This document shows, one piece after another, positions 18,026-60,146 of a stretch of 64,000 bases of DNA. Origin of the DNA: Takakia lepidozioides. Taxonomy: Eukaryota > Plantae > Bryophyta. Both the position numbers and the translations under genes were made by a program. The stretch covers positions 20,708,001-20,772,000 of the forward strand of contig CM060734.1 of the NCBI GenBank assembly GCA_030704615.1. The letters run 5' to 3'. The notes under the pieces are model-generated. The model had not been told where the DNA came from. It was given only the letters and a program-made list of their open reading frames with translations, and did not search any database. How positions within the stretch are numbered: position 1 is the stretch's first letter; each line of letters starts with the position of its first letter.

Positions 18026-19452
18026 TGTAGAATAAAACTAGAATCAATCCTAAAAAAGGATCAATTAGTTCTAAGGTTTGTTCGCTGGGGAAAGCACTAT
18101 ACGACTAATACATAATGATGCCAGACTATTCTATCTCTCTCTATCCTTTCTTTGAAACAACTTCTACCAACAGTCACGATCATCATTCTTCCAGATTCAT
18201 GAATATTCTCTCCATCTTCTATTAACTCTGTTCCATCGGCTGAAATCAAATACCATTGCTCCACTATATTCTTCCTCCAATAATCTCTCTAATACAAAGT
18301 CAACAGCTCTCGATACCATTCTTTATTAACTAACCATAGATTGATTATCTCCCTGACGCTACATTGTAATCTTTTAAAGATATCTAGAGACCAACTATGA
18401 GGCAGTCCAGTAATCAATTCTACAGGATATACTATCTGTTCTTCTTCACACATTGCTAGTGATCGTTCTTCACCACCAATTCTGTTTCTCAAGTCGTTCC
18501 AGGGATTTTCCCTCACCAAAGTTATGATTCCATTCTTTCATAAGTTCAGGATAGCCTTTAAATGGTCTATACCACTTCTGCAACCAACTATACTTCCAAT
18601 AACAACTCCGGTATAGAATGGATATCTCCCTATGCCATCCTTTATTGACCAATTGCAATAAGAATACTTCTTTATCACTACACAAAATTTCTGAAAGATT
18701 GTTATCGATAAATGGTCTGGTAATCCAGAGATCAATTCTGACACTTCCTTTATTCCTTCACTATTGCTCTCCACCATGCAAATGATTTTAATTCACTGTT
18801 TCATTCCTATCATGAATCCAATTGAAAACCCTCTCTCTGTCTTCTTTTCCTTAATCGGCTCCTTCTTGAGCTTTGAATATCTCTTTATCGATATTCCTCT
18901 TGATGGACCAGAACTAATCCTCACATAGAATTCTTATCTGTTTCATTTATGCGCATTCTCATCATCTCATATGGTTCTTCAGTTCTTACACACAAAAACA
19001 CATCCTCATTCCATCACTCCATTCTTCACACGTACACAAAGTGAATTGCACTTCTTTTTTCTTCTTCTTCTCATTCATAAATCACAACACCGCAAGAACG
19101 CAGTACTAAATCTACCATTGCAGAATAACTCTATAATCTACCTCCTACTCACTCTACTCCCTCTACTCCCGGTCACGGCTCTCCGGCTCAATTGACACTT
19201 TCTGCTTCTCATTAACGCTTTATATAGCAGAGTATTTCAATAACTGTAATAACCGCTCAAAAACTTCTTCATCCATCCTTTACAATTTTTCATCCATCCC
19301 TTCTATCATTCAGTCCAAGATAGACTATCGATTGTATACAAGATATCGAAGAACATTGCTCTATCGCAGCAATATCGAAGGTATCGCAGGCTAGAAAGAT
19401 ATTAAAAAGTTCTGAAAATTGTCATTAAGTCAGAAATTCCTATTATTCTACA
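18026..19452 (-). repeat. 3' LTR of element A
   Basis: TG...CA ends; near-identical to 53855-55283; purine tract AGGAGTGGGG (minus strand) immediately internal at ~19455-19465. Confidence 0.95.
18289..18777 (-). pseudogene. Two tandem paralogous F-box-like mini-ORFs inside the element A LTR (second copy at ~53993-54620)
   Basis: ELISGLPDHLSITIFQK...LLQLVNKGWHREISILY and ELITGLPHSWSLDIFKRL...LWLVNKEWYRELLTLY fit the F-box pattern LIxGLPxxLxxxIFxRL...LxLVxKxW. Confidence 0.55.
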
Positions 19453-19504
19453 TAGCCCCACTCCTAATTGTGCAGCGCCCCCGCAAACACTATATCCTCT
19501 GCAA

Positions 19505-20509
19505 CTAATTTCTTGGCAGCTTCTCCCGCCTCCCCTCTGACTCATGCGATCGACGATGGTCACGCTCATCCCCTTCCTTCTGGAACTGCTTGAACGCCAT
19601 ATAGGGGTGGTATCGCGAAGGCCCCCTATCATCGTACATAGCAGAATCTGCACACTGAAGAAATTCAGTCAAGCACATCAATTCTAACACCCGCATTTCC
19701 CTTGCCGGGTGATGCAATAACTTGGCTACTATCCCGAATTCATGTCCTCCCAACATAGACCTGTTAACATCAACAACAACATGGTAGTAGTGACACCACT
19801 TAGCCAAAACCCCACAAAAAATGGCTGCCATAAAACACAAGGGATCAAAATGATTCGCATGCAGCCCCTGAAAGGCTTTGTACGCTGTTTCACAATAGTC
19901 CGCACTGCGGAACTCTCTTGGAATTAACGGCCAATTGTAAGGTAAGGACGTCAAGTGCTCATTCTCGTGCCATTGACCACGACGCGCACACATGCATACA
20001 CCAAATCGGCCTGTAATATTCCGTGGCCACGGTCCACTGATTGGTGTCAATCGAGTGCCCATCTTCAAAATCGATTCTCCCGTCGCAGTGTGGCCATAGT
20101 CCTGCCCCATCCATAACAACACTTCCCAACATGGCAGCACCTTATCGTCAGAATCCGCATAGACCTTCTCTGTTTTGCCCAAAAACTCTGAGTACTCCCA
20201 GTTAGTAGGAAAGTGGCATCGTTCGAATATCGCGAAGCCCACCTGCAAAACTTGTGTAGCACTGGGTTGATTGATGTACAAGTCCTCCATCCATCTGGCC
20301 GTCAATAACTCTGGCCAAGTTTTTGCTTCCATCCACTTGCTTACCCTTTGCTGAATTGCAGTGTGCGTCCAGACATATGCAGATCCATGTAAACACTCTG
20401 GAACCAGCCGATACCTGCGATGAACTCTCTCCAACATCGTATGGAAATGGGCCTCGTCCAATACTTGAGCCACCAGAGGTTGCACCATATCTAGGTACCT
20501 CGGCAACAA
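19505..20509 (-). CDS. Element A 3' accessory ORF, C-terminal part, function unknown
   Basis: 334-aa ORF between integrase and the 3' LTR, same strand as pol; the upstream part is displaced by the element B insertion. Confidence 0.6.
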   Translation of the reverse strand: MLPRYLDMVQPLVAQVLDEAHFHTMLERVHRRYRLVPECLHGSAYVWTHTAIQQRVSKWMEAKTWPELLTARWMEDLYINQPSATQVLQVGFAIFERCHFPTNWEYSEFLGKTEKVYADSDDKVLPCWEVLLWMGQDYGHTATGESILKMGTRLTPISGPWPRNITGRFGVCMCARRGQWHENEHLTSLPYNWPLIPREFRSADYCETAYKAFQGLHANHFDPLCFMAAIFCGVLAKWCHYYHVVVDVNRSMLGGHEFGIVAKLLHHPAREMRVLELMCLTEFLQCADSAMYDDRGPSRYHPYMAFKQFQKEGDERDHRRSHESEGRREKLPRN

Positions 20510-20754
20510 TTTGTCATCTAGCCTTGGAATAGCATAAAGAAAACCACAAGCATGTACTCGATTCCAGTGTCTATCGCGGAGGTAAGATTGTCAGAACGCC
20601 TCCAGTCTATCTTCCAATTGTTTATAATACCAAAAACAGCGACTGACAGGATCTCCAACAGTAAACAAAAACTGTTCTGGATGGGCGACTGCTATGTCTC
20701 CCCTCACCACCATCTCCACGGCCAGATTCTCCATGCAATAGTTGCACAGGTCTT

Positions 20755-21229
20755 TGTCGCGCGGCTTTTACTCACCCATCCCTTCGCTATCCGAGGCGGG
20801 AACTCCAAGATAGAAGAGTTGGAAATCTCTAAGCACTCAGCCCGCTCAGAACAATCAGTCATGACCTACAACTAGTGTATCATGGGGGTGTTTCCTATTT
20901 GTTTTCCTTCCCGCATTCATGTTAGCTAGTTACCTTACTGTTGGTATTTAAGTATCAGTTTGCTTCAGCAATCTATCGGATTCCATCAACTCATCCATTC
21001 ATTCCACAGCTTCACTCAGATCTCTCTACATAGTGTGAGTATGAAGTATGTATCAGATTAATATCTATCAAGTATCAGGCTGAAGCCATGGTATCTCTAT
21101 TCTGCTCTACATTACAACTCTATTTCTTGCATTCAGCAAGTATCAACAGATCGTTCTCCTCCTACTCCGTGCTCTCCCTCTTTCTGCTCAGAGATGCGCT
21201 CTCCCTCTCCGCTCATTTCCAAGTTCTGA

Positions 21230-21271
<42 letters not shown>

Positions 21272-21746
21272 AAGTCCTTCCAGAAGTGATGATTTTCAGT
21301 CCTCGCTCCTGGCTTTATCTTCCTACCCGTTGTTCTAACCGTTTTCCTCACTAACCGTCATCCATGAACTAACATGTTCCATTCGCAGATGTTGTTCCCC
21401 ACAGTCGTTCCCTGTCCTGCTATCCGTTCCCTATGGTCGTGACAGCTGTGTCAAGCTGTGACTGGCTGTGTGAAACTGTGACGGGCTGTGACTGGCTGTG
21501 CGACTGTGTTGGGCTGTGTCAGGCTGTGTCGAGCTATGACTAGCTGTGCGACTGTGTCGGGCTGTGACGGGCTGTGTCGGGCTATGATTGGCTGTGCGAC
21601 TGTGACGGGCTGTGTTGGCTGTGTCTCTCCCCCCTAAAGTCTGTTGCTGTCACCCCTAAGGCTCCTATTGGTCTCAGTCTGTGTAAAAATTAAGGGTACC
21701 CCACAGATCCCGTAAAAGCGTCTAAGTCCCAGACAGTCCTCTAACA
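20755..21746 (-). repeat. 3' LTR of element B, containing a C40 run and GGCTGTG-type short tandem repeats
   Basis: Matches 44707-45653; poly-C at 21231-21270; ~10-bp ggctgtg(tc/ac) repeats at ~21445-21625. Confidence 0.95.
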
Positions 21747-21784
21747 TTACCCCTTCCCCTCTCAAAAAGTCGTGTCCTCACGGT

Positions 21785-22908
21785 TTACTGTTTGGGATTA
21801 GCAAACCTTTGTGAGCGAGCACCCTTCTGACGTTGAGAGTCTCGTGAAGGACTCTGTGTGCGAGCCCGAGGTCTGTCACTGGTTGACGGAGATGATTGAA
21901 CACTACCTGGATATGTCAGTCCCTCTGGAGGCTGATATCGAGGTAATCTTTCAGGCATAGGAGACCCCCGTCGCTTCTTCTCTGCCATCTGAATTGCATA
22001 GTCCTCTGTCATGTCAAAAGAGTCCGCTGAAGAAACAGTTGTATCAAAATCCTCATCGCCTCTCAGGTGTTTTAACGGCCGAACTTTTTGTGGAATCCTC
22101 TGGGGCATACAATGTTGTCCCACCATGTCTGGAAGTTTAAACTGCAAAACTTGCTGTAAGCGTTGAATGGCAAAATTGGTGAAGACCCTAAGCTCCTTGT
22201 CTGTCAAGGTGAGTGGGGTACCAATGACTTGTGAATTGTGCAAGTATTTCCATGCCTCATGTCCCTTAAGAAAAATATCGTCAGGCCGAATTTCTGTGTT
22301 GACAAATTGTTCCAGGCCGCATGAAACCATGAACGAATCTGAGAATCCTTTTGCATGATAATTTTTGCCTCATATAGGTACATATGAGGTGGCACTGAAG
22401 GTAAGACCCAATGATCCCCACTGGAATAACTCCGAAAGCACGTTTGCATCTTTCTGCTGCTCAATGTGATAACGTACCAGAAAACAAGCAGCGTAGTATA
22501 ACCCGCAGCCCATGACAATACTTGCTACCTCTTTGGTCTTGGTATAAATGAATCCATGTACACTTGGAAGGCAATTAATTCCTTCAACATGGTACTTGCC
22601 TCATGTCAGTACTGCGCAAAGTGATGATCCTCTCAATTGGTCGATTGTTCGGAAGAACTTTAGTCCTAGTTGCCAACTGGCAGCCAAATGCGCATGATTT
22701 GATAGTAATGTGCCAACGACTGCGGAGGACTAAATTCCTTCCAAGCCAAATCCAACACAATGGGAATTTGGTTGAAGGGCATAATCATAGCCCGACTGTA
22801 CTCCCGTGCAGCAAGAGTTTTAGGTGGGTTAAAAGCAGCATTCCCCCATACCTTAGGCTGTGGTGGCTGTGGTGTGGCTGTAGTAACAAAAGGGTCAGCT
22901 ACTGGCAC
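21785..22908 (-). pseudogene. Element B accessory ORF region, distal part
   Basis: Frameshifted minus-strand ORFs 21785-22330, 22204-22518 and 22666-22908, conserved in the second copy at 14792-15322. Confidence 0.6.
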
Positions 22909-23137
22909 AGTGATTGTTGTGGTGTTGGTAGCACTGGTTCTTGTACCATTGGCATCTTCTGCACCCCCTGCGAAGAAGACTGAAAAGCCAAAGTTCTGGC
23001 TTGTAAATAAGAAGCCATCAGTTGCTCCTCAGGTACAAAGACTCCTTGGTCAATATTTGATGTCAGGTCCTCTACCTGAGTCTGCAGGCCGTCTACATCC
23101 TCTTATAGCTCCGCTATCCTACTATAGACATTGTCTA

Positions 23138-23637
23138 TGTCGTGCGCATACATATCGCTACACAACTACATCGCTGTCCAAACCACACCACACATATATG
23201 CACAATAAAGTAGTCTAAGAAAACACACTGTTCACACAAGAAACAACATGAATCCAACAACATCACTCTTAAAACAGAAGTCGAGCCAGGGGCACCCCAA
23301 GCTATGGGGACTCCACCCCACAACAACCTACACTCCCATCATGAGCACACTCAGTCCTAAACGCATGAAGGAGCTCGGTCGCGCAGGCTCAACTCGAGAG
23401 AGATGAGCTGCGCGACTGCCGCTCTCGTGAAGATAAGACGGTTCAGGTGTCAAACTAAACTACACCTGATTTAACACTTGACCTAAATCCAAGTGTTAAA
23501 TACAAATAACTAGCTTTATTCTAGTTGTTTTCACACTGTGCTTATTTAACTTGACAGCTGTCGTGCGCATACATATCGCTACACAACTACATCGCTGTCC
23601 AAACCACACCACACATATATGCACAATAAAGTAGTCT
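23138..23637 (-). repeat. 3' terminal B1-(GC)-A2-B2 repeat block of element C
   Basis: 79-bp B repeat identical at 23138-23216 and 23559-23637. ~342-bp A repeat at 23215-23556 matches 34613-34957 with about 8-9 differences. Confidence 0.95.
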
Positions 23638-23902
23638 GCCACAATCGCCCCCCTAGCTGGTGGATAGGTCCCTCTACTCCAGATAGCTACAAGATGTAAT
23701 AGCCACAGCCGTACTAAGTCCTCTATCACTGTCCCTATTGTACTCAAACTCTATAGACCAAGAGGCCGGGTACAAGAGTAGCCCCATCGTTAGTCGCCGT
23801 CTTGCAATCTGTGAACTTGAGCCAGGACCTCGTGTGTTCAAGGTCTCCTAGTAGCTGGGCCTTGCGTTTCTTGTTAGCCTTCCATGGTTGTATCCACTCC
23901 CA

Positions 23903-24055
23903 CTATCCAATGCAATGTGGACATAACCAATCCCCATCCGGAACCATCTCAAGAGGTGGAGTCAAGCATCCCATATGCCAACCTCTAGAGCATCGATCAC
24001 ACACCAGCATGGTGGCTGCCCCTCTAGCAGACCCACACAACATGCACCTCAAACC
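23903..24055 (-). CDS. PHD finger at the C-terminus of the element C integrase
   Basis: Manual translation: CMLCGSARGAATMLVCDRCSRGWHMGCLTPPLEMVPDGDWLCPHCIG*, a canonical C4HC3 PHD with the W-x-C-x2-C ending. Confidence 0.93.
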   Translation of the reverse strand, partial: GLRCMLCGSARGAATMLVCDRCSRGWHMGCLTPPLEMVPDGDWLCPHCIG

Positions 24056-26880
24056 TGCAGATACCACTGCCAGGTTTGGTCAATCCTGCCATCGACATTC
24101 GGAAGGTGACATGGCGCACAATTACGCACATGGTCCTTCCAAGTTATGCCATCCCGACCCTCCAAGACCAAGACGCCTGAGGGCAAGACCTCTCGAACCC
24201 TCAAAATAACACGTCCTGCAGTCACATCCAAGGTCGTAGGAGCAGTCTGCTGCAGATAGACATAGTCACAGGGTTGAATCTCCGAACCCCAGGACGATAG
24301 CCCCCACCACGTATGGTAGCATACCTCAACGTATCACGGTGTTGTGCAATGGCAAGGTTCTCGAAAGCCATGGGCATGACTTTCTTGAACAACTCTGCAC
24401 GCTGCTCACATGCACGTGCCCACACGTCCGGATCGTCAAGGTTAAGAACTGTAGCAGCTTCTCTGCGAATGGATGTAGGCAAATCCGGCTCTCGGCCAAA
24501 GAGAAGAAAGTATGGTGAGAAGAGGCAAGTGATGCTTGCTTGCTGAACCTGTAGCCCATGGCTAACCAGGGTAACTGAAGGTCCCAATCTCCTAGGTGTC
24601 CCTTCTGCAAGCCATACTTGCGCAAACCCCTCTTTACTGTCTGAACAACTCTCTCTGCCAAGCCATCGGCCTCAGGATGATCCCGAGAAGTGGTGCGGTG
24701 GTCTATCAAGGCCTTGTCACACAAAGCCTGAAACTCCCCAAGAACTCTCTCCCTTGGTCCGTGAGTACCTCAGCTGGAGCACCGAATCGGCTAAGCACAC
24801 AATCCAAGAATGCATACGCAGCTCCCTCACTAGCCTTATCAGGCAATGGAACCAATTCAATCCACTTGGAGAAGTGCTCCACCATCACCAACACGTACTT
24901 GTTGTGGCGCATGGTCAGTGGCAACGGCCCTGCGAAGTCAAGACTCCACCTGTAGCCCAATCCCATGATCGGAAGAGGGTGCAATTGTGGAGTAGGGGCG
25001 TTGAATGAAGCACGCACCCTGTCACACACACCATGCACCTAGCCACAAATTGTTGCACCTCTGTGTGCATACCACGCCACCAATACTGCCCCTGCAGTAG
25101 ACTATGAGTGCGTCGCACCCCAAAATGCCCCAACTCCTCATGGGCATGCCGCACTAACCGTGCCCGCTGTGTTGGGTGAGGCACAATCCTCACTCGACCA
25201 TCCTCCCACACTCGGAGCAGGTGTGTCCCCTCCCACTTGAACCTCTTGGCTCGTTGTAGGATCCGATCCCTCTCCTTGGCAGTCACAGTGGCTGCAGTGT
25301 CTCCAGTGCGGAGGTAGTCCAACACAACTGAATCCTCATGTATATCTTTGGCGACGCCACCTTGCTCATTGTGCTGCCTCAGGTCCTCAACACTTGATCT
25401 ACAGTCATCCCTGTTGCAGGTCCAACCTGGCCTTCCACTGCCAAATACACAGAAATAATGCGATGCATGCCATCCGGGCACCATCTCCTCTCCGTCTCAC
25501 CATGCCACCGAGCTCCAGTGTCATCCTGCTGGCTCGTGCATGGATTGCGACTCAACCCATCTGCATTGCGATTGACAAAACCCGGTCGATGCACCACCTG
25601 AAAGTCATACTCTTGAAGGATGAGTGCCCACCGTGCAAGCTTCCCCGTAAGCTTGTCTGACTCCATCAACCACTTGAGTGGTTGGTGATCCGTGACAAGG
25701 GTGAAGAGATTGCCGTATATATAGCACCTGAAGTGTGCCACACGGCCCACACTGCAGCTAAGCATCTCCCTCATATGAGCTATACTTAGACTCTGCAGCA
25801 TTGTTTTCGGCTAGCATAAGCCACTACGAACTCTCTCCCTCATCATCCACCTGTGTGAGCACCGCTCCAAGCCCCAGCATGCTCCAATCTGTTTGCAGCT
25901 GAAAAGGACGCCCCCTGAATAGGTCGTCTCAAGATGGGCGCCGAGGTCAACCTTGCCTTGAGCTCTTGAAAAGCTTGTTCTTGCTCATCTTCCCACTGCC
26001 ACTCCCTGGTCCACCTTGGTCAGCTTGGTTAGAGCCTTTGCAATGGCACTAAATCCCTTAACAACCGTCTGTAATAGTTTGCTAACCCCATGAAAGCTCG
26101 AACTCGGCTCACATCCGTGGGGCGTGGAACCTGTGCAATGGACTCTACCTTAGTCTGCTGTACCCCAATCCTCCAGGATATATCATGTGACCCAGATACT
26201 CAATCTGGTTGTGGAAAACTTGCACTTTCCCGGATGTAACTTCAATCCGTGCGCCCTCAAGCGCTCAAATACCCCCTGAAGGTGTCTCTCATGCTCCTCC
26301 ACCACCGTAGCACTAAGATGATGATGTCATCTATGTAGCACGAGCAAACTCCACCCCTGCTAGAATCCTGTCCATGACTCTTTGAAACTCAGCGGAGCGT
26401 TTTTAGCCCAAATGGTAAGAACCGCCACTGGTATAGGCAATCCTTCCCGTGCTCATTGATCCCCCAGAATGCCGTCTTTTGCTTTTGCTTATCCGCCTCC
26501 TTGATCGGCAACTGGTGATATCCGGATCGTAAATCCAACGTGCTAAAGACCTTGGAATGCCCAATGGCATCAAAGATCTCCTCTGGTGTCGGCATGGCAT
26601 ACCTATCGGACTTGGTCTGACGATTTATAGGCCGGTAATCACCGCACATACGTCTCTCCGTCAATTGCCATAGACATCCTTCTTGGCTGGCATCAACTGT
26701 GGCTGAAGCATACTCTCCACCAGAGAGCTCCACCAAACCTGCCTCCCAGAGATCTTGAGTCCTCATCTGAATCAAAGACCTCTCCATGTCACTGTATCTA
26801 TAGGGTCTCCGAAAGATTGGCGTGTCAGTGGCCAACTCAATACGGATCTCTTGACCCTTCAGTGCTCCCAAGTCCTTCAA
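24056..26880 (-). pseudogene. pol: Element C RT - RNase H - integrase (frameshifted)
   Basis: RT LDLRSGYHQL, PFGLK, CYIDDII (~26320-26340). RH FQLQTDWS, TDHQPLKWL...GKLARWAL. INT HEELGHFG...CMVC, SLDFAGPL, TDQGREF, GLAERVVQTVKRGL. Confidence 0.93.
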
Positions 26881-27319
26881 ACTGAAGGCAAAGCAATTCT
26901 GTAAGCCCTCAGGAACCGCCGTATACGTCGTCTCTCTCCTCCGGTGACAATGGGTCCAATGTCAGGCTCCCAATTGTCCTCCGTAACTGCAACCTTAAGT
27001 CCAGTGGGCTTAGAGGTAGAGGACGCGTCCCGTGGTTGCTATGCTGCACCTCTTGAGCAGTACCCCCCTTCCTCAGTCAATGACAAGGCCTCATCCTGCC
27101 CCCATCATCTCATCATTGAGAACCTCCTCATCCCGAGAAGAATCCCCAACCTCATCCATCACAGCTGCCTTGGCTGCCAACTCCCTCTGAACCTCGAGCA
27201 CCTCCCACGTGTGCCATGGATGTCTACACCCCGTGGTCCTCACCGGCTCGCCCCCACTCGCTGCCTGTACCGTCTCGGTAGGCAGAGAGGTCAAGGGAAG
27301 TGCACTCCGCACTCTACGT

Positions 27320-28260
27320 TGCTCAGCCATAGCCAAGCTGATAATCCAGGTCAAGCAATTGAGATCCATTGCTTGCCCCAACACCTGACGACGTGATGCC
27401 TGAGAAAGAGAAGGCACCGCCGTGGTCCCAGTGGAAAATCCCCATAGCCCGCTCTCGCTCGTCGGCATTAGGCTCCACTAACTGCTGCAACTGAGCATCC
27501 ACAGAGGCCAGGTCCACCATCCCGAAAAGCATGGGATCCTGGGAAGCTGAGCAGTGTAGGTAATGCTGCTCGTGGTTGACCCACCCTGTTGACCACTGCC
27601 AAAGGCGAACGGTCATCGTGTCTCACACGTTGAGACTGCCTCCCTGTGTCCAAAATGCCATCCACGGTGAGGTGTGCTGCCGCTGCACCCCATCAAATGC
27701 ACGCTTGAGCAGTGCGGGTGGCATCAAGTTAGTCCACCAAATCGTGGACGATGAGCCCGTGACCCCACTGCAGCTGCATCCAGCAACACTGCTGACCCAG
27801 CCACGACCGGACTTGATGCACACTGGCCATCACCCTGGCCCGAGAATCACCCATCAGTGGCACATTCTCCAAGATGTATGCTGAGATACAGCTTGATGAA
27901 GCTGCAGTGGCGCAAAATCCGCACCATCTCCCAAAACAGACTTGTCCTCGAGTCTCGCAATCCATTGCCATGTCCGGCTGATGAATGCCCTTGGCAGGGC
28001 CAACCTGCCACTACCAGATCAATGGAGCCAACCCGCTCCAAATCCTGCGCCCCCAACAACGCAATGTCTGCTGCAAGGCCTGCTGATATCACGAACTGCA
28101 GACATCGGCAACAAACAGGGTACTGCTGTACCATTGAGCAACATGGCGCAGTGAGACGCGTCGTGCAGTCTCATCCCTCTCCACATACAGTAACGCAACA
28201 CACCTGCCTGCCACTGCAGCCAATCCAGTGCTGATCCCGCCAAACAAGTCCAGAAGGCAT
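27320..28260 (-). pseudogene. DNMT3-like C5-cytosine DNA methyltransferase domain embedded in pol between PR and RT (frameshifted)
   Basis: Motifs in canonical order: I LLDLFGGISTGL; II YVERD; IV IDLVVAGWPCQG; GLRDSRTSLFWE; VI YILENV; VIII LLDAAAVGSRAHRPR/WWTNL; IX-X ERERAMG/FSTGTT...SRRQVLGQAM. Confidence 0.92.
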
Positions 28261-28699
28261 GCGTTCATCCGGGCACTGCCACACAAGAGGTGTGGTGTCC
28301 AATGGCGACAACTGAGGTGGTCCTGGTGCAATCCCCACACTCTCCTCCTCTCCTGACGGTACAAAAGCCTCTACCCAGGCTTGTTGCACCCGTCGATCAG
28401 CAACCTGCTGCAAATCCTTGCTCGTACCCCACAATGGAGTGTGAGCAACCATGGCAGGCAACTCCGCCATACCATGCATGTCATCCTCCTGCTCTGCTGG
28501 AGGTGGCACATCCTTTGCATGGGCATTGCCTTCCAGCAACTCTCCGGCCAACTAACTGCAGCTGTAAAGGCGGCTAGTGTTGGCATCTTGCCCGTTGGGC
28601 AGCCGCAATACCCCCAATGAATGTCACAGGGAGCTGTGCACGACGACCATCCCCTGACTGCCATCCAGGCCTGTAGAATGCTGACTCCTCCCAAAAGTC

Positions 28700-31168
28700 C
28701 AGGGTGAAGCCCATGGGGTATAACACTGCCCCACCAACGAGGACATCGTAAGAGACCCGTCTGTCACATGGCCTTGGCTCGCATTACTGAGCCATCGTAG
28801 GATGATCCGGCTGCAGTCTAATGGCCAACTGATGCCGTGTCATGCCCCGAGCCTGCTCTGATCCTCCCAGATGTCTGTATCTGGAAAGGACAAGGCTCCA
28901 TATCCGCCTCCATGAGGCCCAAACCTGCAATAGCAGCTCTGCCCAACATCAGTGGCTGAGCTCCCGAGTCCAACAAGACCCGCAGTGGCCGGTACTTCTT
29001 GCCTGCCGGTCCACTCAAAGAGAAAATGTCATCCTGGTTGTCTAACAAGACAACTCCAGGTGTCACCATGGCGCGCTCAAAGGCTGGCCTAGCTGGCAGC
29101 TCCGTCAACCTGGCAGCTGCAGCTTGCCATGGCGCAGCCGTGGCAGTCTTGACCCTCAAATCCGAGGATCCCTCTGCCACTACACCTTCCAGTAACTCCG
29201 CAGAAGATGAAGTGACCTCCCCCCCACTTTCACAGAGTGTTGCTGCTAGTCTGAACACTGCAGCTGGTCTTACCCCCGGCGTCGCAATCATGGTTGCCGA
29301 GAACAGTGGGGCTTGACACACAGAGGTGGCTGCCCCCAACAACACACCGGCTGCACTAGCCTTGGCAGCAGGTGTCAGTGCTGCACGTGTAGCTCTCCCC
29401 AATGGCATAGTAACCTCCGCCTCGGTAACAGTCGGGCGAGAACTAGGTGCCATGGATGGCGTCGACACTGTCTGTCTCGCCAATGTGAATGACTGAGGAA
29501 GCCTCGCCTGACGGCTTGCCTCCCCACGTTGTGGATCCAACTCCACCTCTGCACCTCGTGGCTCAGGAACTCGTGCTGCTCCTCGAGTCACGGCTGCAGC
29601 AGACTCCACCTGCTCTAGTGGTAGTGCTGCTCCGCACATAATCCCATGCTCCCATATCTCCTCCTCAGGAGCAGGAGGTGGACCATCCCGCCTGGGAGCC
29701 GGTACCGCCTGAGCTATAGCCATGGCAGCGAGCCTCTGCTCTAGCTGCTGAAGCCGGTTGGCCATGCCTTGGTCAACACCCTGACCTCCGCGTCCTTGGC
29801 CATGTTGAGCTTGCCCTGCACCTCGTGCCCGACCACCTCGTCCTCTCTGGGCTGGTCCACCTCGCCCCCGGCACCATTGTTCCCTTGGAACTGGCCTGGG
29901 TGCAACTCAGGATGCAAGTCATAACACTGGGCATCTCCATGCCCATACTTGCCACAATGCCCACACTGCAACTGTGCAGGTTGTGCTTGTGCCGGCCTTC
30001 TGCCACTCTCTGGGCAATCTCTCTTGACATGGGGTCCTCCACATGTCCAACATATCACCCCTGGTTGCTGTTGGCCTGCAAAAGATGCCATGGGCCTCTG
30101 CACCTGAGGTCCCCTGTAAGCTCCATGGAACTTGGGTTGGGAAACCTTGCCCCCCTGACCACGCTATTGGGCAGTCCCTTGTGCCTGTGGGCTGGCAGCT
30201 GCGCCTCGTGCAGGCATGTCCTTGCCAAATCCAATGGTAACAACTCGCTCCTCCACCATGTTGAGCTCAATCCGCTCAGCCAGCAGAAACACATCTGCTA
30301 ATGTGGGTTGGGCTGCTTGTAACAGGGTTGCATCCCGCACCCTTCTCCTGAGCTCCTTGTCCAAAATGCCATACCAGAACTGGATTGCCTGAGCTTCAGT
30401 AACCCCTTGGGTCACACTTATCAAGCGCCTCATACGAGTGTACGCCTCTCGCAGGCTCTCATTGGGTTTGCGCTGGAAGTCTTGCAAACTTCGCAGCTTC
30501 TCTGTCCGTACACCTTGGTAGTTCCTCCGCAACTCCTGGAAGAACTCCACCACCGGGCTGAATCTAGGCACATGTGTTGTGGTCGTGGGAGGATGAGTAG
30601 TGGCACCTTCTGCAGAAGTACTGGCACTACTTGTTCCACTACTAGTGCTAGCTGTGGAAGGTATTGGTGCTGATGCCACTACTGGTCGCGTTGTTCCTCG
30701 AGTAATGGAGACGTGGTCAGGTGACCAATACATCCTCCACTCTTCAATTTCTGCTTCATGTCCTCGCCTGAACTCGTGTTAATCGTCCATAGGCGGGCCT
30801 TCCAAATGCTGGAACAATCCCTTCCACATGAATGGGGTGAACAGCTGTGGATTGCGCATCTGCTGCAAATCACACCAACTGTCGAACTCCTGGATAAAGT
30901 CATCCAGCTCGATTGTGCCCACAGCTCCAGAGTATCTGCGAGGTCCCTTGGTAGCTCCATACATCTCCTCCATGTCGTCCCACAACAATGGCGAAGAAAA
31001 CTGCACACTTGTTGACGAAACCTCCGGGTCTGTGTCAGACTCTACAGTAGTTGAGGGTGGTGGTGAAGGTGGTCTGAACCGAATACCTTGTCTTGTGAAC
31101 CCACTCTCACTGTTACTGCCTGTAGCCGTACTCCCCCTCAAAACCCTTGGGTAACTCCGTGATGACAC
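28700..31168 (-). pseudogene. gag: Element C gag and aspartic protease
   Basis: IELDDFIQEFDSWC capsid-like region; zinc knuckles CWTCGGPHVKRDC and CGHCGKYGHGDAQC; protease VLLDSGAQ (~28960-28985). Confidence 0.9.
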
Positions 31169-33690
31169 TCACAATGTGCACCTCCCCCACGTGACACTAT
31201 AAGGCTCTAGTACTATTTCTAATGGTGACATGGGTGGGCACCTGTTGCAGTTTAAGGGTCATATCCCACTGGCTCAGGGCACCTGCACCTGCATCCACCG
31301 CAAGAACTCCTATGGTTGGCTGGTCATCAACCCAGTCTCACCATAGAAGAAACACTGGTGGTCTTGCTGGTCATCACTCCAGCCTCACCCACCGACAGCA
31401 TACTCTAGGATTGACCGGTGATCAAATCCGGCCTAATCCCTATGAAAGCAAGCGCCCACACAAAACCAACATGGCGCACAGTCAAGCATACAGGTGTTGG
31501 GGGGATCCAAACACAAGAAATCAAAACATCAACACCCCCCACCCAAAATCCAGCTGCAATGCTGATCCTGTAGAATAGCCCAACCCAAAACCCTGGACTG
31601 ACTGGCCTCCACCAAGAGAGGCTTTGGCAACTACAAGTACAAGGTAATGAAAATAGTACAGTGATGGAGGGGAAGAATAGAAGCCCGACCAAGCAAGATC
31701 TAATCTTGATCTATGCTATCAACTGCCAGACTTCTCTCAAAGTGCCTCGTCTGCATGATGGTAAGGTGTAGGAGGTATATCTATGTCCAGAAACCTGCCA
31801 CTAACCTTGTCCCAAGCTACAGTAGCTCGCTCTAACCAACCCTCCTCCTCTTTCTGCCAGGTAGAGACAAAGCAATACTCCCCTATCTCCCGCTCACTGA
31901 ACACTAAAGAAACAAAGGTAGGGTCTGATAGTCTCTCAACTCGAAAACTTTGAGACGGTTGCGGGTGTCCTCATTGCAAATGATTGCATTTCCTTCACGC
32001 ACAACAAACATGTCATTGCTAATGAACCCCCGCTCGTGGTTGCTCTGTGTAGAGCGTATCCGGCTGCAACCATGTCTGATTGCACAAACTTGTGTAGCTC
32101 CTGCTTCTCTGCTCCAGTACACCACGGCCTTGTGGCTGAACACCTTGTCCCCGGGGCTGTCTTTGGCTGTGTTCCAAGCCTAGCTTCACACCACTTTGGT
32201 ATTTCACCTACAGCTGCAGAACTACTGGCTCCAACAGAGTTCTGACTGTCCAAGGCGATATTGAGGCCCTCAATGCCAACTACAGCAGTCTGTTGTCTAC
32301 TGCTAATGCCTGACTCCCAGTATGCAATCAACTCGTCCAACTGTTCTCCACTCAAATCAGTCTGAGTTCCTTGGGAAACATAAATCTTGTCCCCTTGGGT
32401 GCACAGGCTAAGAGAAGAGACCTACCCTTCAATTACGTCCTCATTTCCCCCAGCCATACAAGGAGTACATCCCCAGATTTATCTCTCATGTAGACCAGAA
32501 CAGGTTCTAGAAACAGGATTGTGGATCTTTCATGGCACACTCACACTCTAAAAATTCCATAGATTTTTAGCAGAGTCCCAAAAAAAACAAAAACCAGGTG
32601 TAGATAGGTAGATATCCCTTTTCTGCAGCTATCCCCCCAAAAACTGAGTCAAACAGAGCTCATTTGACAAAGATATGACCAACTAGGCTCTTTAAACATA
32701 ACACCTTTTTCTTTTCTTTTCCCTTTTTAAAAAAAATAAAAAAAAGACAAAACAAATACAAAGAAAACTCCTTTTTCTTTTTCTTTTTCAATACTTGTCT
32801 TGGTTCCCTGTTCCCTGGTTATCTACGGGTTCCCGAGGCCGTTCCCCTCCAGGTCTATGCAAAATCAAGCTGGTGCCGACAATGCTCAAGTACTGAGGCA
32901 CTCAGGATTGAAGACCCAAAGTGCTTCTATCTCGTCTCACCAACAGCCGACTCTACTGCCCGACTCTACTGCCTGCAGCAGCTCTCTCACCAGCAGGGCT
33001 TGTACCCGCAGGCCCTTGTCTCAAGCGATTCTCCAGCACCATCAACAACGAAGGCAGCTCGTACTCCGAATCACCGAATCCTCGAAGGCGCCAGCTCTCA
33101 ACCCCCACTGCAATTGTGGATGGGCTACCAGGTGCTCCAACAGCATGCGCTGGACATGGAACCAGCTTCAAAACGTCCAACTCCAAGCCTCGTTAAAGGG
33201 TCCAAAGCGCCTCGTTTATCTACAATGAAGGTGCACACCCTTTTGCAACCCTCAACGCAGCAGTGACATGCTCCCTTCCACTGGCCATCAGTATTTTTCT
33301 CACCTCTGCAGTGACACCCCACCTGCCAGTTGCATCATGAATCCAGAGCTTCTCCTCGTCTCTGTTTTCGGTTTTTGGATTTCTGCCTACAATCCCATAG
33401 GCAATTGAATGTTGAAACACTTCGGGCGACCATAGATCTCCCCATGGAGCAGATGGCGTGCTGCTTATATCTATAAGCTGCGAGCTTGGAGTGGTCTCAG
33501 AAAACCAACAAAATGCGGCTCAGCAGCCAGCCTCCTCAGAACAAGCCAACCCTGCCAAGTAGCTTCAATGCACTAGGAGAAACCTTAGAACACGGTGTTT
33601 TTCATGCCCTACTTAGGAGGAACAAAACAAACCTACAATACCGGCAGTAAGCGCCACTGTTGTGGCGCGGACAAACTCCTTCACGGCAGC

Positions 33691-33982
33691 GGACGGCTGG
33701 ACATGCTCGACGCGCACATGGATGCGCTTCCGAATGATCCTGGGACCAACCTGCTTATTAACAACTACACCAACAGCCTGCTTGGTGACAGACGATACCA
33801 GTGCGGCCATGGTAGAACTTGTGGGGCATGCCCTTGTGCACAGCGCCATTCACCTTGATGTCCACATAATCTCCAATCCTGTAGTTTCTCAGATACGTGG
33901 TCAAGTGAATGTACCCCTTTTGCCTGAATGGCCGCGAGAACAGATCCCTGGTGCGCGATCGCAATCCATGACCTGCCGGCAT
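33691..33982 (-). pseudogene. RPL21: Captured, intronless 5' part of 60S ribosomal protein L21 (eL21) inside the element C leader
   Basis: [62 protein letters not shown], then a frameshift, then [33 protein letters not shown]; truncated at the C-terminus. Confidence 0.95.
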
Positions 33983-34612
33983 GGCTCGTGCCTTCCCTCT
34001 CTCACCGCCGCTGCACATTGACACATTCATGCGAGAAACTCCAAGTGCATAAAAGCTTGGACAGGCTCATTCATGGGAGAGTGCTTGCAAGTCACGGTGG
34101 ACTCAATCTGAAGCCACACAATGAGCAATATACAGCATGTCCAAAATCAAAGATGCCGAACAGGTTTGTGCGTAACTAGAGCAGCTCCGTGCAGCTGGTG
34201 GGTGCACTAAAGGCTGGCAATGAAGGAGCACAGGAAGCAGCACTTGAGGCTTTGTTCCTCCTACTACGTCAAGCCTGGTCCTCCAGTCCTGCCGAGGTGG
34301 GAAAAGCACAAGCCATAGCAGCGGCATAAGCCATTCTTATGCTGCAACTGTTGATGAGGACAGGCCCCCCACGCTTTCAGGACAAGGCAGACAGCCTGTT
34401 GCAGTGCATGCCAGGAAGACGAGAATATTGTTAGCTTTGAACTGCTGCAGCGACACTTTGAGTGTTTCCCGTCTTCCTGTTATGCTCCCTAGGCTAGCCA
34501 GTCTAACTGCAGGCTCTCGTAACCAAGCTATATTATAGTTTTTAAAAGAACGTCACATCTAGCTTAGCACTAGAAACTAGATCATTTTCATCTATCTCGA
34601 GTGATAAACAAG

Positions 34613-34957
34613 CTAAGAAAACACACTGTTCACACAAGGAACAACATGAATCCAACAACATCACTCGTTAAAACAGAAGTCGAGCCAGGGGCACCCCAAG
34701 CTGTGGGGACTCCACCCCACAACAACCTACACTCCCATCATGAGCACACTCAGTCCTAAACGCATGAAGGAGCTCGGTCGCGCAGGCTCAACTTGAGAGA
34801 GATGAGCTGCGCGACTGCCGCTCTCGTGAAGATAAGACGGTTCAGGTGTCAAACTAAACTTGACACCTGATTTAACACTTGACCTAAATCCAAGTGTTAA
34901 ACACAAATAACTAGCTTTATTCTAGTTGTTTTCACACTATGCTTATTTAACTTGATA
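34613..34957 (-). repeat. 5' terminal repeat A1 of element C
   Basis: Matches 23215-23556; lacks the B segment; not followed by a TGG tRNA PBS. Confidence 0.95.
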
Positions 34958-35139
34958 TCTATAGTAGTTGTGGCAATGTTCTGCACTTGCAGTCTAAGCT
35001 CATTCATCTCGCTTTGGGTGAGCTTTCGTGGTGCTTTGCCCTCCACCGGCCCTTGTGCTAACCAGACCTTCATAGGTGGTTATCCACCAAGTTGCTTGTG
35101 GCACCCTGAGAGTCTGCTCCTCTGTGAGCCTGTACACAT

Positions 35140-38099: not shown

Positions 38100-41000
38100 G
38101 CGTTTCAACATGCAAATCATGCTGCAATGGTTTGTCATGGATACCACTGTACCCCTTCAACTTATTGGCATTGACTCTTCCCAGCATCTCTTTGTTAATG
38201 GTTTGTAACATGGCGGTGTTGTTATCATACATCTTCTGTATGACATAAGGTCCTTTCCATGGTGATTTAAGCTTAGAAGCTTTAATCTTTCCCTTCTTCT
38301 GCAACCAGAGAACCAAATCCCCGTCTTAAAAGTCTTTAACTTGCCTTCATCAAACTGTTCCTTCTCTTCATCTGAATTCTGGTCATATTATCAGCTGCAT
38401 CAGCACGTACTTCTTCCACATGGTATAATTCATGTTTCCTGACCTTAATTGAATCTTGCAATTCCATTCTCTTTCCCCATTCCGTTCTCATGGTAGTAAC
38501 AGGAATTCCACTGGAAGTAAAGCTTCCATACCATAAACTAATTGGAATGGTGTATACTTAGTGGACTTTATATGAAGTCCTGTATGACCACAAAGCTGTC
38601 AGCAGCTTTGTATCCCAATCCGTTCTGTTTGCATTGACTATCTTAGCCAAGATAGTACATAGTATTTTGTTGGTAGCCTCTGCCTGCCATTACCCTGTGG
38701 GTAATAGGTTGTACTCTTCCTATGCACAATCATGAACTCTTAGTCAATAATTCAATGGTCTCATTAATGAAGTGACTTCCCTGATCACTGATAAATTCCA
38801 AGGGACAGCCAAATCGTGTAAGTATGTTCTCATACAGGAACCTTGTTGTGGACTTGGCTGTGTTGTCCCTCAAAGCTTTAGCTTCCACCCACTTCGTAGT
38901 ATAATCAGTGGCTGTAATTATGTACCTGTTCTGTGTATTCTTGGCTGGTGGGTTAATTGGTCCAACAAAGTCTAGTCCCCATTTCTGAAATGGTTCCGTA
39001 GGCATTGTAGGATGCAAAGCCATCTTCCCAGATCTCTGCAAAGGTCCTAGCCTCTGACATTCATCACAACTCTGACAATACTTGTGTACATCTTTGAACA
39101 AAGTAGGCCACCAGTAACCTGCATGTAGTATCTTCCTACTGGTAGTCTCTTCTCCAAAATGACCTCCTGCCACTCCTTTATGAACTTCCTCCAAAACTTT
39201 ATTAACTTCATGGTGGTATAAGCATCGCTTCAGCACTCCATCTGGTCCTAGCTTATACATTCTGCTCCCTACCATAGTGTAAGGTAGAGCCTTGATAGCA
39301 ATTCTCTTTTTCTGCTCCTTTCCATAACTTGGTGGGCACTGACCATGAGCAAGGTAGTATCTGATTGGCCACTGCCAATCTAACCAGTCATCTGCACTTC
39401 CCTGCACCTCCACTGCAAATAGACTCGCATCTGGTAATTGATCATCTACTCCCGTGGCTGGTTCTCCTGTTGATAACCGTGACAAGTGATCCGCCACAAG
39501 ATGCAGCCTCCCAGGCTTGTAAACAACCTCGAACTCAAACTCGTGCAAGATTATCAACCATCTTGCTATTCTTCCGCTTATCAGAGGTTTGTTTTACCAG
39601 GTATATCAGAGCCTGGTGATCCACATAGAACATAAACTTCTTGCCCAACAGGTAATGCCTGAATTTTCTTCACTGCATAGATCATTGCCAATGCTTCTCT
39701 TTCCGTTGTGCTATAATTTCTTTCGCATTGTTCATCAAAAATCGGCTAGCATAGTAGTACACAGGTGGATCTATCCTTCCTGTAACATTTTGGGCTAACC
39801 TGCTCCTCTGTGCTCCTCCAGAAAGCATCACAGGTGAACATGAAATATTTCCTGCCAGTGAGGATTAATCAGCATAGGTGTAGTTATTTACGGACAATGT
39901 AAGTTCCTCAAAGCCTGTTGACATTCAGGTGGCCATGCAAACACTTGCATCTTCTTTCTCTTCAGAAGTTTGGCTCAATGTGCTGCTATCTGTGCATACC
40001 GTCTGACAAATCTTCTGTAATAACTGGTTTGCCCAGGAATCTCCTTAGACTCTTAACATTCACGGTGGTGGAGAGGCTTTAATGGCCTCGGTTTTCCTGG
40101 GATCCACAAGAAGTCCCTCTTATATACACAATGGTGTCCCAGAAGCACCCTGAGTTCACACATAAAGTACACTTCTCTCTGGATTCAGGCCCAGACCTCT
40201 CATCCTACATCTGGCCAGACATAACTCCAATTTATGCAAGTGCTCATTCTTAGAGCTGTACACACTGAAATCAATCCAGAACACCTGCATGAAATCATCC
40301 AGATACTCATGAAAAGATTCACTTATCACTCTCTGAAAGGTTGCTGGTGCATTACAAAGTCCAAAGGGCATGACTTTGTATGCATAAGCACCCCAGTCTG
40401 TGATGAAAGCTGTCTTTCCTTGGTCTTCTTCTGCCACTTGCACTTGATTATAACCACTGAAGCCATCCATGAATGAGTACATCCTCATGGCCTGCCACAG
40501 TGTCCAATACTGCTTCTGTGAATGGCAATGGGAAAGGATCTTTCTTCGTACAAGCATTCAGCTTCTTGTAGTTCACACAACTCTTAGTTTACCATTCTTC
40601 TTGGGAACTATCACAATGGGTGACAACCATGTTGTATACTCTATTGGGTATATAAACTTAGTCTCAGCCAACTCTTGATCTCTTCTCCAACCTTCTGTGC
40701 ATAGTTGGGATTCATTTGTACCTTGCCTGCTTGATTGGTACTGATCCCAGTTCCAGTTCAATCTTATGGCTGACAGATTTCAGGTGGTATCCCTTTTAGA
40801 TCCTCATAGCTCCAAGCAAATACATCTCTGTATTTGATGAACAAACTCTTAGCTTCTTCAAAGAATTCTGGCTCCAATTCAGCAGCTCCTACCTTCACCA
40901 TCCTTGGTTCCTCTTCAGTTCCCACATTCACTTCCCTCACCTGCTCATCAGCTGTGATTGTCCAACCAGTCACACTTCATCCTGTAAACTCACAGTGGGT

Positions 41001-59960: not shown

Positions 59961-60146
59961 AGATGACGATGACTCCGATGACCAAGCAGACTTGCAGCTT
60001 GATGAGGACGAAGAAGCTCTGGATGATGATGTTCAAGTTGATTAGACACGTAATCAAAGCTACATAACAATTCTCGCACATAATTATACCCATCCCTTCA
60101 ATTGATTGTACATGTACATGCATGTAGCTTATTTCTATGATTGATC

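What the first reader, a model, noticed from the sequence alone, without database searches (positions are those of the whole stretch)
23138..34957. DDE-integrase Gypsy-type retrotransposon with split direct repeats and a pre-formed end-to-end junction instead of normal LTRs
Seen: on the coding (minus) strand the layout is A1 (34957-34613) - leader/gag/pol - B1 (23637-23559) - GC - A2 (23556-23215) - B2 (23216-23138), flanked by a 4-bp TSD TCTA. The B copies are identical (79 bp) and the A copies differ at about 8-9 of ~342 bp. The internal B1/A2 junction reads ...CGACA-GC-TGTCAAG..., the element's own right and left ends abutted across 2 bp in a GACAGCTGTC palindrome. No tRNA PBS follows A1. 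A G-rich PPT-like tract (AGGGGGGCGAT) lies just upstream of B1. The independent relative at 60147 also goes from the A-like repeat straight into TTATCACTCGAGA, with no room for B and no PBS. Established: A...BAB split direct repeats characterise tyrosine-recombinase retroelements (PAT/TOC1/Ngaro), which are thought to integrate circles. IS3-family DDE transposases integrate circles through abutted ends separated by a few bp. Inference: this family may replicate without a tRNA primer, via a circular cDNA whose CA-GC-TG junction is processed by a Gypsy DDE integrase. I do not know this arrangement as described for Ty3/Gypsy elements.
Basis: partly seen in the sequence, partly recalled or inferred. 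Interest (0 to 1): 0.95.

Follow-up and report, generated by a model that had tools for sequence, protein, structure and literature searches.

The report
Gypsy retrotransposon with circularly permuted LTRs
This is a decayed plant jumping gene of the Gypsy type whose end repeats sit in the order A...B-A-B instead of LTR...LTR, and relatives from green algae to liverworts share this. The DNA copy therefore seems to be joined end to end and reopened at a conserved 10-bp palindrome before it inserts.

Summary
On the minus strand the unit reads TAGA | A1 | leader, gag, PR, DNMT, RT, RH, IN | G-rich PPT | B1 | GC | A2 | B2 | TAGA. It is 11,820 bp long and its reading frames are broken.

It is not a one-off. 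Six further elements have the same layout: Calypogeia, two Closterium families, Cymbomonas and two metagenome contigs. All share the invariant palindrome GACAGCTGTC at B|A. Where both ends are visible, all have 4-bp target duplications. Another accession holds this copy's empty site.

The sequence right after A1 is complementary to a stretch inside A in every element tested, which indicates Tf1-like self-priming. The PPT lies directly before B. The reverse-transcribed LTR is therefore B-GC-A, and the A2|B2 boundary is the two cDNA ends joined. That joint is precise in four elements, 20-21 nt shorter here, and 6 nt longer in one.

Best reading (0.6): cDNA ends are joined, as in a 2-LTR circle, and the DDE integrase opens one internal palindrome.

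The layout had one line of prior mention (KnitGypsy-Dnmt3, 2018). I found no published mechanism. This scan had already found the same thing on other DNA of this genome.

The parts
34958..34961 (-). 5' target-site duplication, TAGA
34613..34957 (-). A1, the part of the LTR from the palindrome half-site (TATCAAG, mutated from TGTCAAG) to near the U5 end. It contains the promoter and R-U5.
34791..34805 (-). Predicted start of R, the self-primer segment in A1 (TCATCTCTCTCAAGT). The A2 copy lies at 23392-23406.
   Evidence: Complementary to the PBS at 14/15 positions, 0 of 200 shuffles. A related copy in run X7 has an 18/18 match.
34603..34612 (-). U5 tail CTTGTTTATC. It is present after A1 but missing from the A2|B2 joint.
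   Evidence: Other copies keep it at their A|B joint (table 5c).
34588..34602 (-). Self-priming PBS, ACTCGAGATAGATGA
   Evidence: The same design is seen in rel60146, L007, L008, L010 and L011.
33691..33982 (-). Intron-less, frameshifted fragment of ribosomal protein L21e in sense orientation inside the leader
   Evidence: Pfam PF01157, 2.6e-29 and 3.5e-10. Sequence.
30167..30778 (-). gag remnant
   Evidence: Retrotrans_gag, weak at 2e-4. 70% nucleotide match to the relative's gag at 62030-62788.
28959..28976 (-). Aspartic protease motif LLDSGA
27340..28301 (-). C5 DNA methyltransferase (DNMT) remnant between protease and RT
   Evidence: PF00145, 1.9e-11. tblastn to P0050 residues 968-1287.
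25475..26910 (-). Reverse transcriptase and RNase H remnants
   Evidence: RVT_1 and RT_RNaseH. tblastn.
24309..25364 (-). Integrase remnant: HHCC zinc finger plus rve DDE core
   Evidence: Integrase_H2C2 1e-15, rve 6e-12, tblastn. HHCC and D,D35E are conserved in intact relatives.
23646..23654 (-). Polypurine tract AGGGGGGCG
   Evidence: A G-run directly before B is also seen in L003, L007, L008, L010 and L011.
23638..23645 (-). U3 head ATTGTGGC. It is present before B1 but missing before B2.
   Evidence: Other copies join the U5 end directly to this head (table 5c).
23559..23637 (-). B1, the 5' part of the reverse-transcribed LTR. It ends in CGACA.
23553..23562 (.). Palindrome GACAGCTGTC, with the GC spacer at 23557-23558. 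This is the proposed integrase cleavage site, where the element's two integrated ends abut.
   Evidence: It is invariant in 7 elements while its flanks are not conserved.
23215..23556 (-). A2, starting TGTCAAG
23138..23216 (-). B2. The A2|B2 boundary (AG at 23215-23216 shared) is the end-to-end joint of the cDNA. Here it lacks 20-21 nt, and the missing stretch is bracketed by a 2-nt AG repeat.
23134..23137 (-). 3' target-site duplication, TAGA

Best explanation
The unit 23138-34957 is one decayed insertion of a Ty3/Gypsy-type LTR retrotransposon that carries a DNA methyltransferase. It belongs to a clade of green algae and bryophytes whose normal inserted form is a circular permutation of its LTRs.

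Shown:
- The layout is A1, genes, PPT, B1, GC, A2, B2.
- The unit is bounded by TGTC...GACA and a 4-bp target duplication.
- The 10-bp palindrome is conserved.
- The PPT lies directly before B, and a self-complementary PBS lies directly after A1.

Inferred:
1. Reverse transcription is primed by the 5' end of the element's own RNA, as in Tf1. It yields a normal linear cDNA whose LTR is B-GC-A.
2. The cDNA ends are not integrase substrates and become joined head to tail. A host-ligated 2-LTR circle is the most likely form. This joining creates the A|B joint.
3. The DDE integrase cuts both strands after the two CA dinucleotides of the palindrome in the 5' LTR. The result is 3'-recessed ends with 2-nt GC overhangs, as on a processed retroviral DNA.
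4. The opened molecule inserts with a 4-bp staggered cut. Transcription from A1 through B1-GC-A2 then regenerates the full LTR in the next round.
For: - Same layout in independent elements. Calypogeia fissa L011 has TSD AGGT. Closterium L010 has TSD GAAC. Closterium L003 shows the 3' end only. Cymbomonas L007 has TSD CGAT, confirmed against a paralogous uninterrupted repeat unit. The HiFi metagenome contig L008 also has the layout.
- GACAGCTGTC is invariant in 7 elements while its flanks are not conserved.
- Self-priming pairing lies directly after A1 in 6 elements. Matches are 14/15, 14/15, 13/13, 12/13, 13/13 and a 12/12 core. Shuffles reaching these values were 0-8 of 200. A related copy shows an 18/18 match.
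- The A2|B2 joint equals the U5 end at the PBS border (plus 0 or 1 nt) joined to the first nucleotide after the PPT in L003, L007 and L011. In L010 the same holds, with 2 nt (CA) shared by both sides. The same joint is seen in other copies of this genome.
- The joint carries a 20-21 nt loss here and a 6-nt filler in L008. That variability is typical of joined ends.
- In this copy A1 keeps the U5 tail and B1 keeps the U3 head that the joint lacks.
- The empty-site allele shows the whole unit entered in one event.
- Intact relatives conserve HHCC and D,D35E. No tyrosine recombinase was found.
- Precedent: foamy virus and HIV-1 integrases cleave palindromic LTR-LTR junctions (PMC1180852, PMC1905944).
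Against: - No circle, transcript end or enzyme activity was observed. All mechanism steps rest on comparative anatomy.
- A 2-LTR circle has two equivalent palindromes, yet all 6 independent elements show A...B-A-B and never A-B-A...B. If the choice were random, the chance is about 1/32 to 1/64. Either there is an unexplained preference or the intermediate is different.
- The Calypogeia copy has an extra B-GC-A unit.
- The 20-21 nt loss in this copy could be a later deletion.
- The read evidence came from short contigs of a highly repeated family.
Confidence: 0.6

Rival explanations
1. The layout rules are the same, but no ligated circle is involved. Reverse transcriptase itself makes the head-to-tail joint by jumping from the end of its template to the other end. 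This gives a linear LTR-genes-LTR-(part of a third LTR). The integrase then pairs the A half-site of the first palindrome with the B half-site of the last.
For: This would explain why only A...B-A-B is seen in all 6 independent elements. It would also explain the extra unit in Calypogeia. The plus 0 or 1 nt variation and the 6-nt filler at the joint fit non-templated addition during end-to-end template switching.
Against: It requires cleavage far from DNA ends at two separate sites, and it has no known precedent in LTR elements. The 20-21 nt loss bracketed by a 2-nt repeat in this copy looks more like cellular end joining.
Confidence: 0.2
2. The layout is a one-off rearrangement or a misassembly of an ordinary LTR element.
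For: The reading frames are shattered, so the copy is old enough to have been rearranged. No listed contig spans the whole block.
Against: The same layout, palindrome, PPT and PBS placement and 4-bp TSD occur in six other elements from four other organisms and two metagenomes. The empty site shows a single clean insertion. Other copies in the same genome carry A|B joints.
Confidence: 0.02
3. A DIRS/PAT/Ngaro-like mechanism operates. A tyrosine recombinase, encoded here or supplied in trans, integrates a circle, and the integrase is irrelevant.
For: The A1...B1A2B2 layout is the hallmark of PAT, Ngaro and TOC elements (PMC4157794). The 2018 paper calls the repeat structure DIRS-like (PMC5890265).
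Against: No Phage_integrase domain was found in any ORF piece of this copy, on either strand, or in the relatives (and the precomputed Pfam lists). The 4-bp TSDs in four elements fit a DDE integrase, not a tyrosine recombinase. The HHCC and DDE residues are conserved in intact relatives. The unit ends in TG...CA.
Confidence: 0.03
4. The element is an ordinary one whose true LTR is A-B (TG...CA). The 5' LTR lost B and the PBS, and a stray B-GC was added before the 3' LTR.
For: A-B has canonical TGTC...GACA termini.
Against: The PPT lies before B, not before A. The PBS lies directly after A, not after B. Both hold in every element examined.
Confidence: 0.03

Closest known systems
KnitGypsy-Dnmt3 of Klebsormidium nitens (de Mendoza et al. 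2018, PMC5890265)
   Same: A Gypsy-type pol with a DNMT3-like methylase in the polyprotein. The Fig. 4c legend states that the repeat structure is that of a DIRS element while the domains are Gypsy.
   Different: That paper gives no junction anatomy, palindrome, PBS or mechanism. Here the layout is also found in liverworts, Closterium and Cymbomonas. It also occurs in a relative without a DNMT (L008) and in one whose DNMT lies between RNase H and integrase (L007). I could not compare directly with K. nitens DNA.
PAT, Ngaro and TOC1 tyrosine-recombinase retroelements (split direct repeats A1-B1A2B2)
   Same: The same order of repeats. An inferred need for an end-joined or circular intermediate.
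   Different: Those elements encode a tyrosine recombinase. This clade encodes an HHCC-DDE integrase, makes 4-bp duplications and has a Gypsy domain order. The resemblance is convergent.
Cleavage of the palindromic 2-LTR circle junction by foamy virus and HIV-1 integrases (PMC1180852, PMC1905944, PMC4372172)
   Same: A retroviral-type integrase cuts a palindrome made of two abutted LTR ends and produces 3'-processed ends ready for integration.
   Different: In retroviruses the palindrome is the ligation joint itself, and this route is a side path. Here the palindrome is built into each LTR with a 2-bp spacer, the ligation joint lies elsewhere (A|B), and the route appears obligatory.
Tf1/Sushi and Tcn1 self-priming Gypsy elements (summarised in PMC6317226)
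   Same: There is no tRNA PBS. A stretch at the predicted start of R is complementary to the sequence directly after U5.
   Different: Those elements have ordinary LTRs and chromodomains. This clade carries a PHD finger in intact relatives and permuted repeats. The phylogenetic relation was not tested.
IS3/IS30-family insertion sequences with circle junctions
   Same: The two ends abut across a 2-3 bp spacer and form the substrate of a DDE enzyme.
   Different: Those are DNA transposons with no reverse transcription, and the junction is formed by the transposase itself.

Membership tests
Ty3/Gypsy LTR retrotransposons | pol order PR-RT-RNase H-IN with an HHCC-DDE integrase | tested here: met
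   Pfam hits lie in that order on the minus strand. tblastn to an intact relative agrees. HHCC and D,D35E are conserved in relatives.
Ty3/Gypsy LTR retrotransposons | Two complete identical LTRs flanking the internal region | tested here: not met
   The inserted form is A...B-GC-A-B, here and in 6 relatives. The inferred cDNA would still have two B-GC-A LTRs.
Ty3/Gypsy LTR retrotransposons | PPT before the 3' LTR, TG...CA termini and a 4-5 bp TSD | tested here: met
   The PPT lies directly before B. The unit ends are TGTC...GACA. The TSDs are TAGA, CGAT, GAAC and AGGT. An empty site was found.
Ty3/Gypsy LTR retrotransposons | tRNA-complementary PBS | tested here: not met
   There is no TGG within 40 nt after A1. 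A self-complementary PBS takes its place. No comparison with a tRNA set was made.
Gypsy-Dnmt3 (KnitGypsy-Dnmt3 type) | C5 DNA methyltransferase domain inside the pol polyprotein | tested here: met
   PF00145 at 27850-28170, lying between the protease and RT.
Gypsy-Dnmt3 (KnitGypsy-Dnmt3 type) | Sequence relationship to the K. nitens elements | not tested
   No K. nitens sequence was available in the tools used. The closest named relatives were from Calypogeia fissa and Closterium.
DIRS/PAT/Ngaro tyrosine-recombinase retroelements | Split direct repeats A1...B1A2B2 | tested here: met
DIRS/PAT/Ngaro tyrosine-recombinase retroelements | Encodes a tyrosine recombinase | tested here: not met
   No PF00589 hit in ORF pieces of either strand or in relatives.
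Tf1-type self-priming elements | The 5' end of the transcript is complementary to the PBS next to U5 | tested here: inconclusive
   The complementarity is strong and recurs with different sequences in 6 elements. The transcript start was not mapped.
Integration through a circle junction (IS3-like, or retroviral 2-LTR cleavage) | A circular or end-joined intermediate, cleaved at abutted ends by the DDE enzyme | not testable with these tools
   Only its predicted scars are seen: the variable A|B joint and the conserved palindrome.

The most novel reading that the evidence does not exclude
A whole clade of DDE-integrase LTR retrotransposons, from prasinophyte algae to liverworts, must pass through an end-joined (2-LTR circle) cDNA. 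Its integrase opens that molecule at a 10-bp palindrome built into the LTR. The circle, long regarded as a dead end in retroviruses, would then be the regular integration precursor of a natural retroelement lineage. The DIRS-like repeat layout would have arisen convergently, without a tyrosine recombinase.
Probability: 0.55. Interest if true: 0.85.

Novelty: new variant of a known kind. Interest (0 to 1): 0.75.

Why it matters
LTR retrotransposons and retroviruses are textbook examples of integration from the two ends of a linear cDNA, and circles are treated as by-products. A conserved clade whose integrated form can only be explained by an end-joined cDNA reopened at an internal palindrome would be a natural counter-example.

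It would also explain how a DIRS-like repeat layout can arise without a tyrosine recombinase. It would give integrase biochemists a natural palindromic substrate.

There is a practical consequence as well. Standard LTR finders expect two identical LTRs and a tRNA PBS, so they will mis-annotate or miss these elements in algal and bryophyte genomes.

Tried and rejected
- Metagenome contigs L001, L004 and L005 were too short to show the ends.
This is probably because a short-read assembly collapses the repeats. I used it only for the palindrome alignment.
- L006 (Closterium NIES-53) is interrupted by other insertions and has no palindrome match. I set it aside.
- L009 appears to be the counterpart of L003 in the sister strain, so I did not count it as independent.
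- P0132 returned no DNA.
- The 362-aa ORF piece 28821-29906 gave no Pfam hit. It is mostly low-complexity sequence ending in the protease motif.
- The leader of this copy could not be aligned with that of the relative at 60146.
- Only Logan contigs were available for reads. No raw reads and no confirmed RNA run were on offer, so transcript ends could not be mapped and the copy-specific A2|B2 joint could not be shown in a single listed record.
- I considered a 5-bp TSD with shifted ends. I rejected it after the paralogous target in L007 and the empty site here both fitted 4 bp with TGTC...GACA ends.


Full report
**1. What is in the window**

Repeat search and direct reading confirm the reported anatomy on the minus strand. 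The order is:
- TAGA (34961-34958)
- A1 (34957-34613), which starts TATCAAG
- a 3.8-kb leader
- coding remnants
- AGGGGGGCG (23654-23646)
- eight bases, ATTGTGGC
- B1 (23637-23559), which ends CGACA
- GC
- A2 (23556-23215), which starts TGTCAAG
- B2 (23216-23138), which ends CGACA
- TAGA (23137-23134)

The B copies are identical over 79 nt. The A copies differ by six transitions and two indel events. The palindrome GACAGCTGTC occurs once in the 64 kb. The unit is 11,820 bp long.

**2. What it encodes**

All reading frames are broken. Pfam scans of the minus-strand pieces, together with tblastn against an intact relative, give this order:
- gag
- an LLDSGA protease motif
- a C5 DNA methyltransferase
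- RT
- RNase H
- the integrase HHCC finger
- the rve core

No tyrosine recombinase was found on either strand. The leader contains an intron-less, frameshifted fragment of ribosomal protein L21e in sense orientation.

**3. Is the layout a one-off?**

It is not. I searched the RT piece against the protein representatives and then searched an intact polyprotein. I fetched the DNA around relatives and found the same layout each time.

| Element | Layout seen | TSD |
|---|---|---|
| Calypogeia fissa, liverwort (L011), 71-77% nucleotide identity to this copy's pol | A1...B-GC-A-B-GC-A-B | AGGT |
| Closterium sp. NIES-54, family 1 (L010) | full copy | GAAC |
| Closterium sp. NIES-54, family 2 (L003) | 3' end only | not visible |
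| Cymbomonas tetramitiformis (L007) | full copy | CGAT, checked against a paralogous uninterrupted repeat unit |
| HiFi metagenome contig (L008) | A1 cut at its 5' side | not visible |

An alignment of the B|A junction from seven elements shows GACAGCTGTC invariant while its flanks are not conserved. Intact relatives conserve the integrase HHCC and D,D35E residues.

The layout is wider than the methylase-carrying group. L008 has no DNMT hit. The Cymbomonas element has its DNMT between RNase H and integrase.

**4. Evidence from public runs**

Only short Logan contigs were on offer. They still gave three useful results.
- The family is highly repeated in the source species.
- A contig of run X5 (same species label, different study) runs from the 3' flank through a single TCTA into 14 letters that are the exact reverse complement of the 5' flank. 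That is the empty site. The whole A1...B2 unit therefore inserted in one event with a 4-bp duplication, and the insertion is polymorphic.
- Contigs from other copies join the A tail to the sequence just after the PPT. Read on the sense strand, they run ...TATC(A) and then directly ATTGTGGCAGACTAC.

**5. Where the LTR really begins and ends**

The sequence directly after A1 is complementary to a stretch inside A in every element tested.

| Element | Match | Shuffles reaching it |
|---|---|---|
| This copy | 14/15 | 0 of 200 |
| Relative at 60146 | 14/15 | 0 of 200 |
| L007 | 13/13 | 0 of 200 |
| L008 | 12/13 | 4 of 200 |
| L010 | 13/13 | 0 of 200 |
| L011 | 12/12 core (12/15 window tested) | 8 of 200 |

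The sequences differ between elements while the pairing is kept. A related copy in run X7 shows an 18/18 match. This is the design of Tf1-type self-priming, which is known in the Tf1/Sushi and Tcn1 groups (PMC6317226). It explains the missing tRNA PBS.

The PBS lies after A and the G-rich PPT lies directly before B. The LTR made by reverse transcription must therefore be B-GC-A. The palindrome lies inside that LTR. The A2|B2 boundary is then the U5 end joined to the U3 start.

That is exactly what is seen:
- In L003, L007, L011 and the other copies of this genome, the joint is the U5 end at the PBS border (plus 0 or 1 nt) followed by the first base after the PPT. In L010 the same holds, with 2 nt (CA) shared by both sides.
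- In L008 the joint has a 6-nt filler.
- In this copy the joint lacks 20-21 nt. The missing bases are the U5 tail that A1 still has and the U3 head that B1 still has, and the lost stretch is bracketed by a 2-nt AG repeat.

Joints that are precise, trimmed or filled are what joined DNA ends look like.

**6. Mechanism (inferred)**

1. A linear cDNA with B-GC-A LTRs is joined head to tail, most simply as a 2-LTR circle.
2. The integrase cuts after the CA on each strand of one palindrome. This leaves 3'-recessed ends with GC overhangs.
3. The opened molecule inserts with a 4-bp stagger. Opening the palindrome of the 5' LTR gives exactly A1...B1-GC-A2|B2.
4. Transcription from A1 through A2 restores a full LTR in the next cycle.

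There is a precedent for the chemistry. Foamy virus integrase cleaves the palindromic LTR-LTR junction of 2-LTR circles (PMC1180852), and HIV-1 integrase cuts the equivalent palindrome (PMC1905944).

**7. What does not fit yet**

A circle has two equivalent palindromes, yet all six independent elements are A...B-A-B. The Calypogeia copy also has an extra unit.

One rival would explain both points. In it, reverse transcriptase makes the head-to-tail joint by an end-to-end template jump, giving a linear molecule longer than unit length. I rate it at 0.2.

I reject three other readings on the evidence above:
- misassembly or a one-off rearrangement
- a tyrosine recombinase acting in trans
- an A-B LTR with a damaged 5' end

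**8. Comparison with what is known**

The only prior mention I found is the Fig. 4c legend of de Mendoza et al. 2018. It says the repeats of KnitGypsy-Dnmt3 are arranged as in a DIRS element although the domains are Gypsy. A 2026 preprint merely names Gypsy-DNMT3.

Searches for split direct repeats with Gypsy and integrase, and for circle, palindrome and self-priming combinations, found no description of the mechanism. The PAT, Ngaro and TOC elements share the repeat order but use a tyrosine recombinase (PMC4157794).

**9. Earlier notes of this scan**

Other agents reported the same layout on other DNA of this genome, and they pointed me to the 2018 paper. I reached the self-priming reading, before seeing that note. 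I re-tested the paper, the methylase, the liverwort affinity and the clade-wide layout myself.

**10. Limits**

All comparisons are between natural copies.

Noticed in passing
window 33691-33982 (minus strand): An intron-less, frameshifted fragment of ribosomal protein L21e (it starts [15 protein letters not shown]) lies in sense orientation inside the element's leader. No poly(A) tail was seen after it. It is probably host mRNA picked up by template switching during reverse transcription. It helps explain why this leader is 3.8 kb against 1.9 kb in the relative at 60146.
   Followed up: partly
window 60146-64000 (plus strand): A second, diverged family member (about 70% identity in the A repeat) starts with TGTCAAG. 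It has its own self-priming PBS and a gag at 62030-62788. It runs off the window, so its 3' repeats cannot be seen.
   Followed up: partly
window 13201-14817 (plus strand): A fragment 85% identical to the gag-protease part of the element (element positions 4395-6024). It is a further, truncated copy.
   Followed up: no
window 2689-5965, 38509-40485, 47905-50085 (minus strand): Three other Gypsy-type pol remnants of different families were detected by tblastn with the intact relative.
   Followed up: no
L011:12925-13900 (Calypogeia fissa): This liverwort copy ends in B-GC-A-B-GC-A-B, one unit more than usual, with identical A|B joints in both units. The cause could be unequal crossing-over or an intermediate with three LTRs.
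   Followed up: partly
L007 (Cymbomonas) and L008 (metagenome): The permuted layout is not tied to the methylase. L008 has no DNMT hit. In Cymbomonas the DNMT lies between RNase H and integrase rather than before RT, which suggests separate captures or shuffling. L008 also has an unexplained 404-aa ORF after pol.
   Followed up: partly
window 23134-23138 and 34958-34975, run X5: An empty-site contig shows that this 11.8-kb insertion is absent from another sample with the same species label, although the copy's reading frames are badly broken.
   Followed up: partly
L007:6038-7109 and 19139-22707: The Cymbomonas element sits inside a long array of roughly 300-550 bp tandem repeats. This allowed its target site to be read from a neighbouring unit.
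   Followed up: partly
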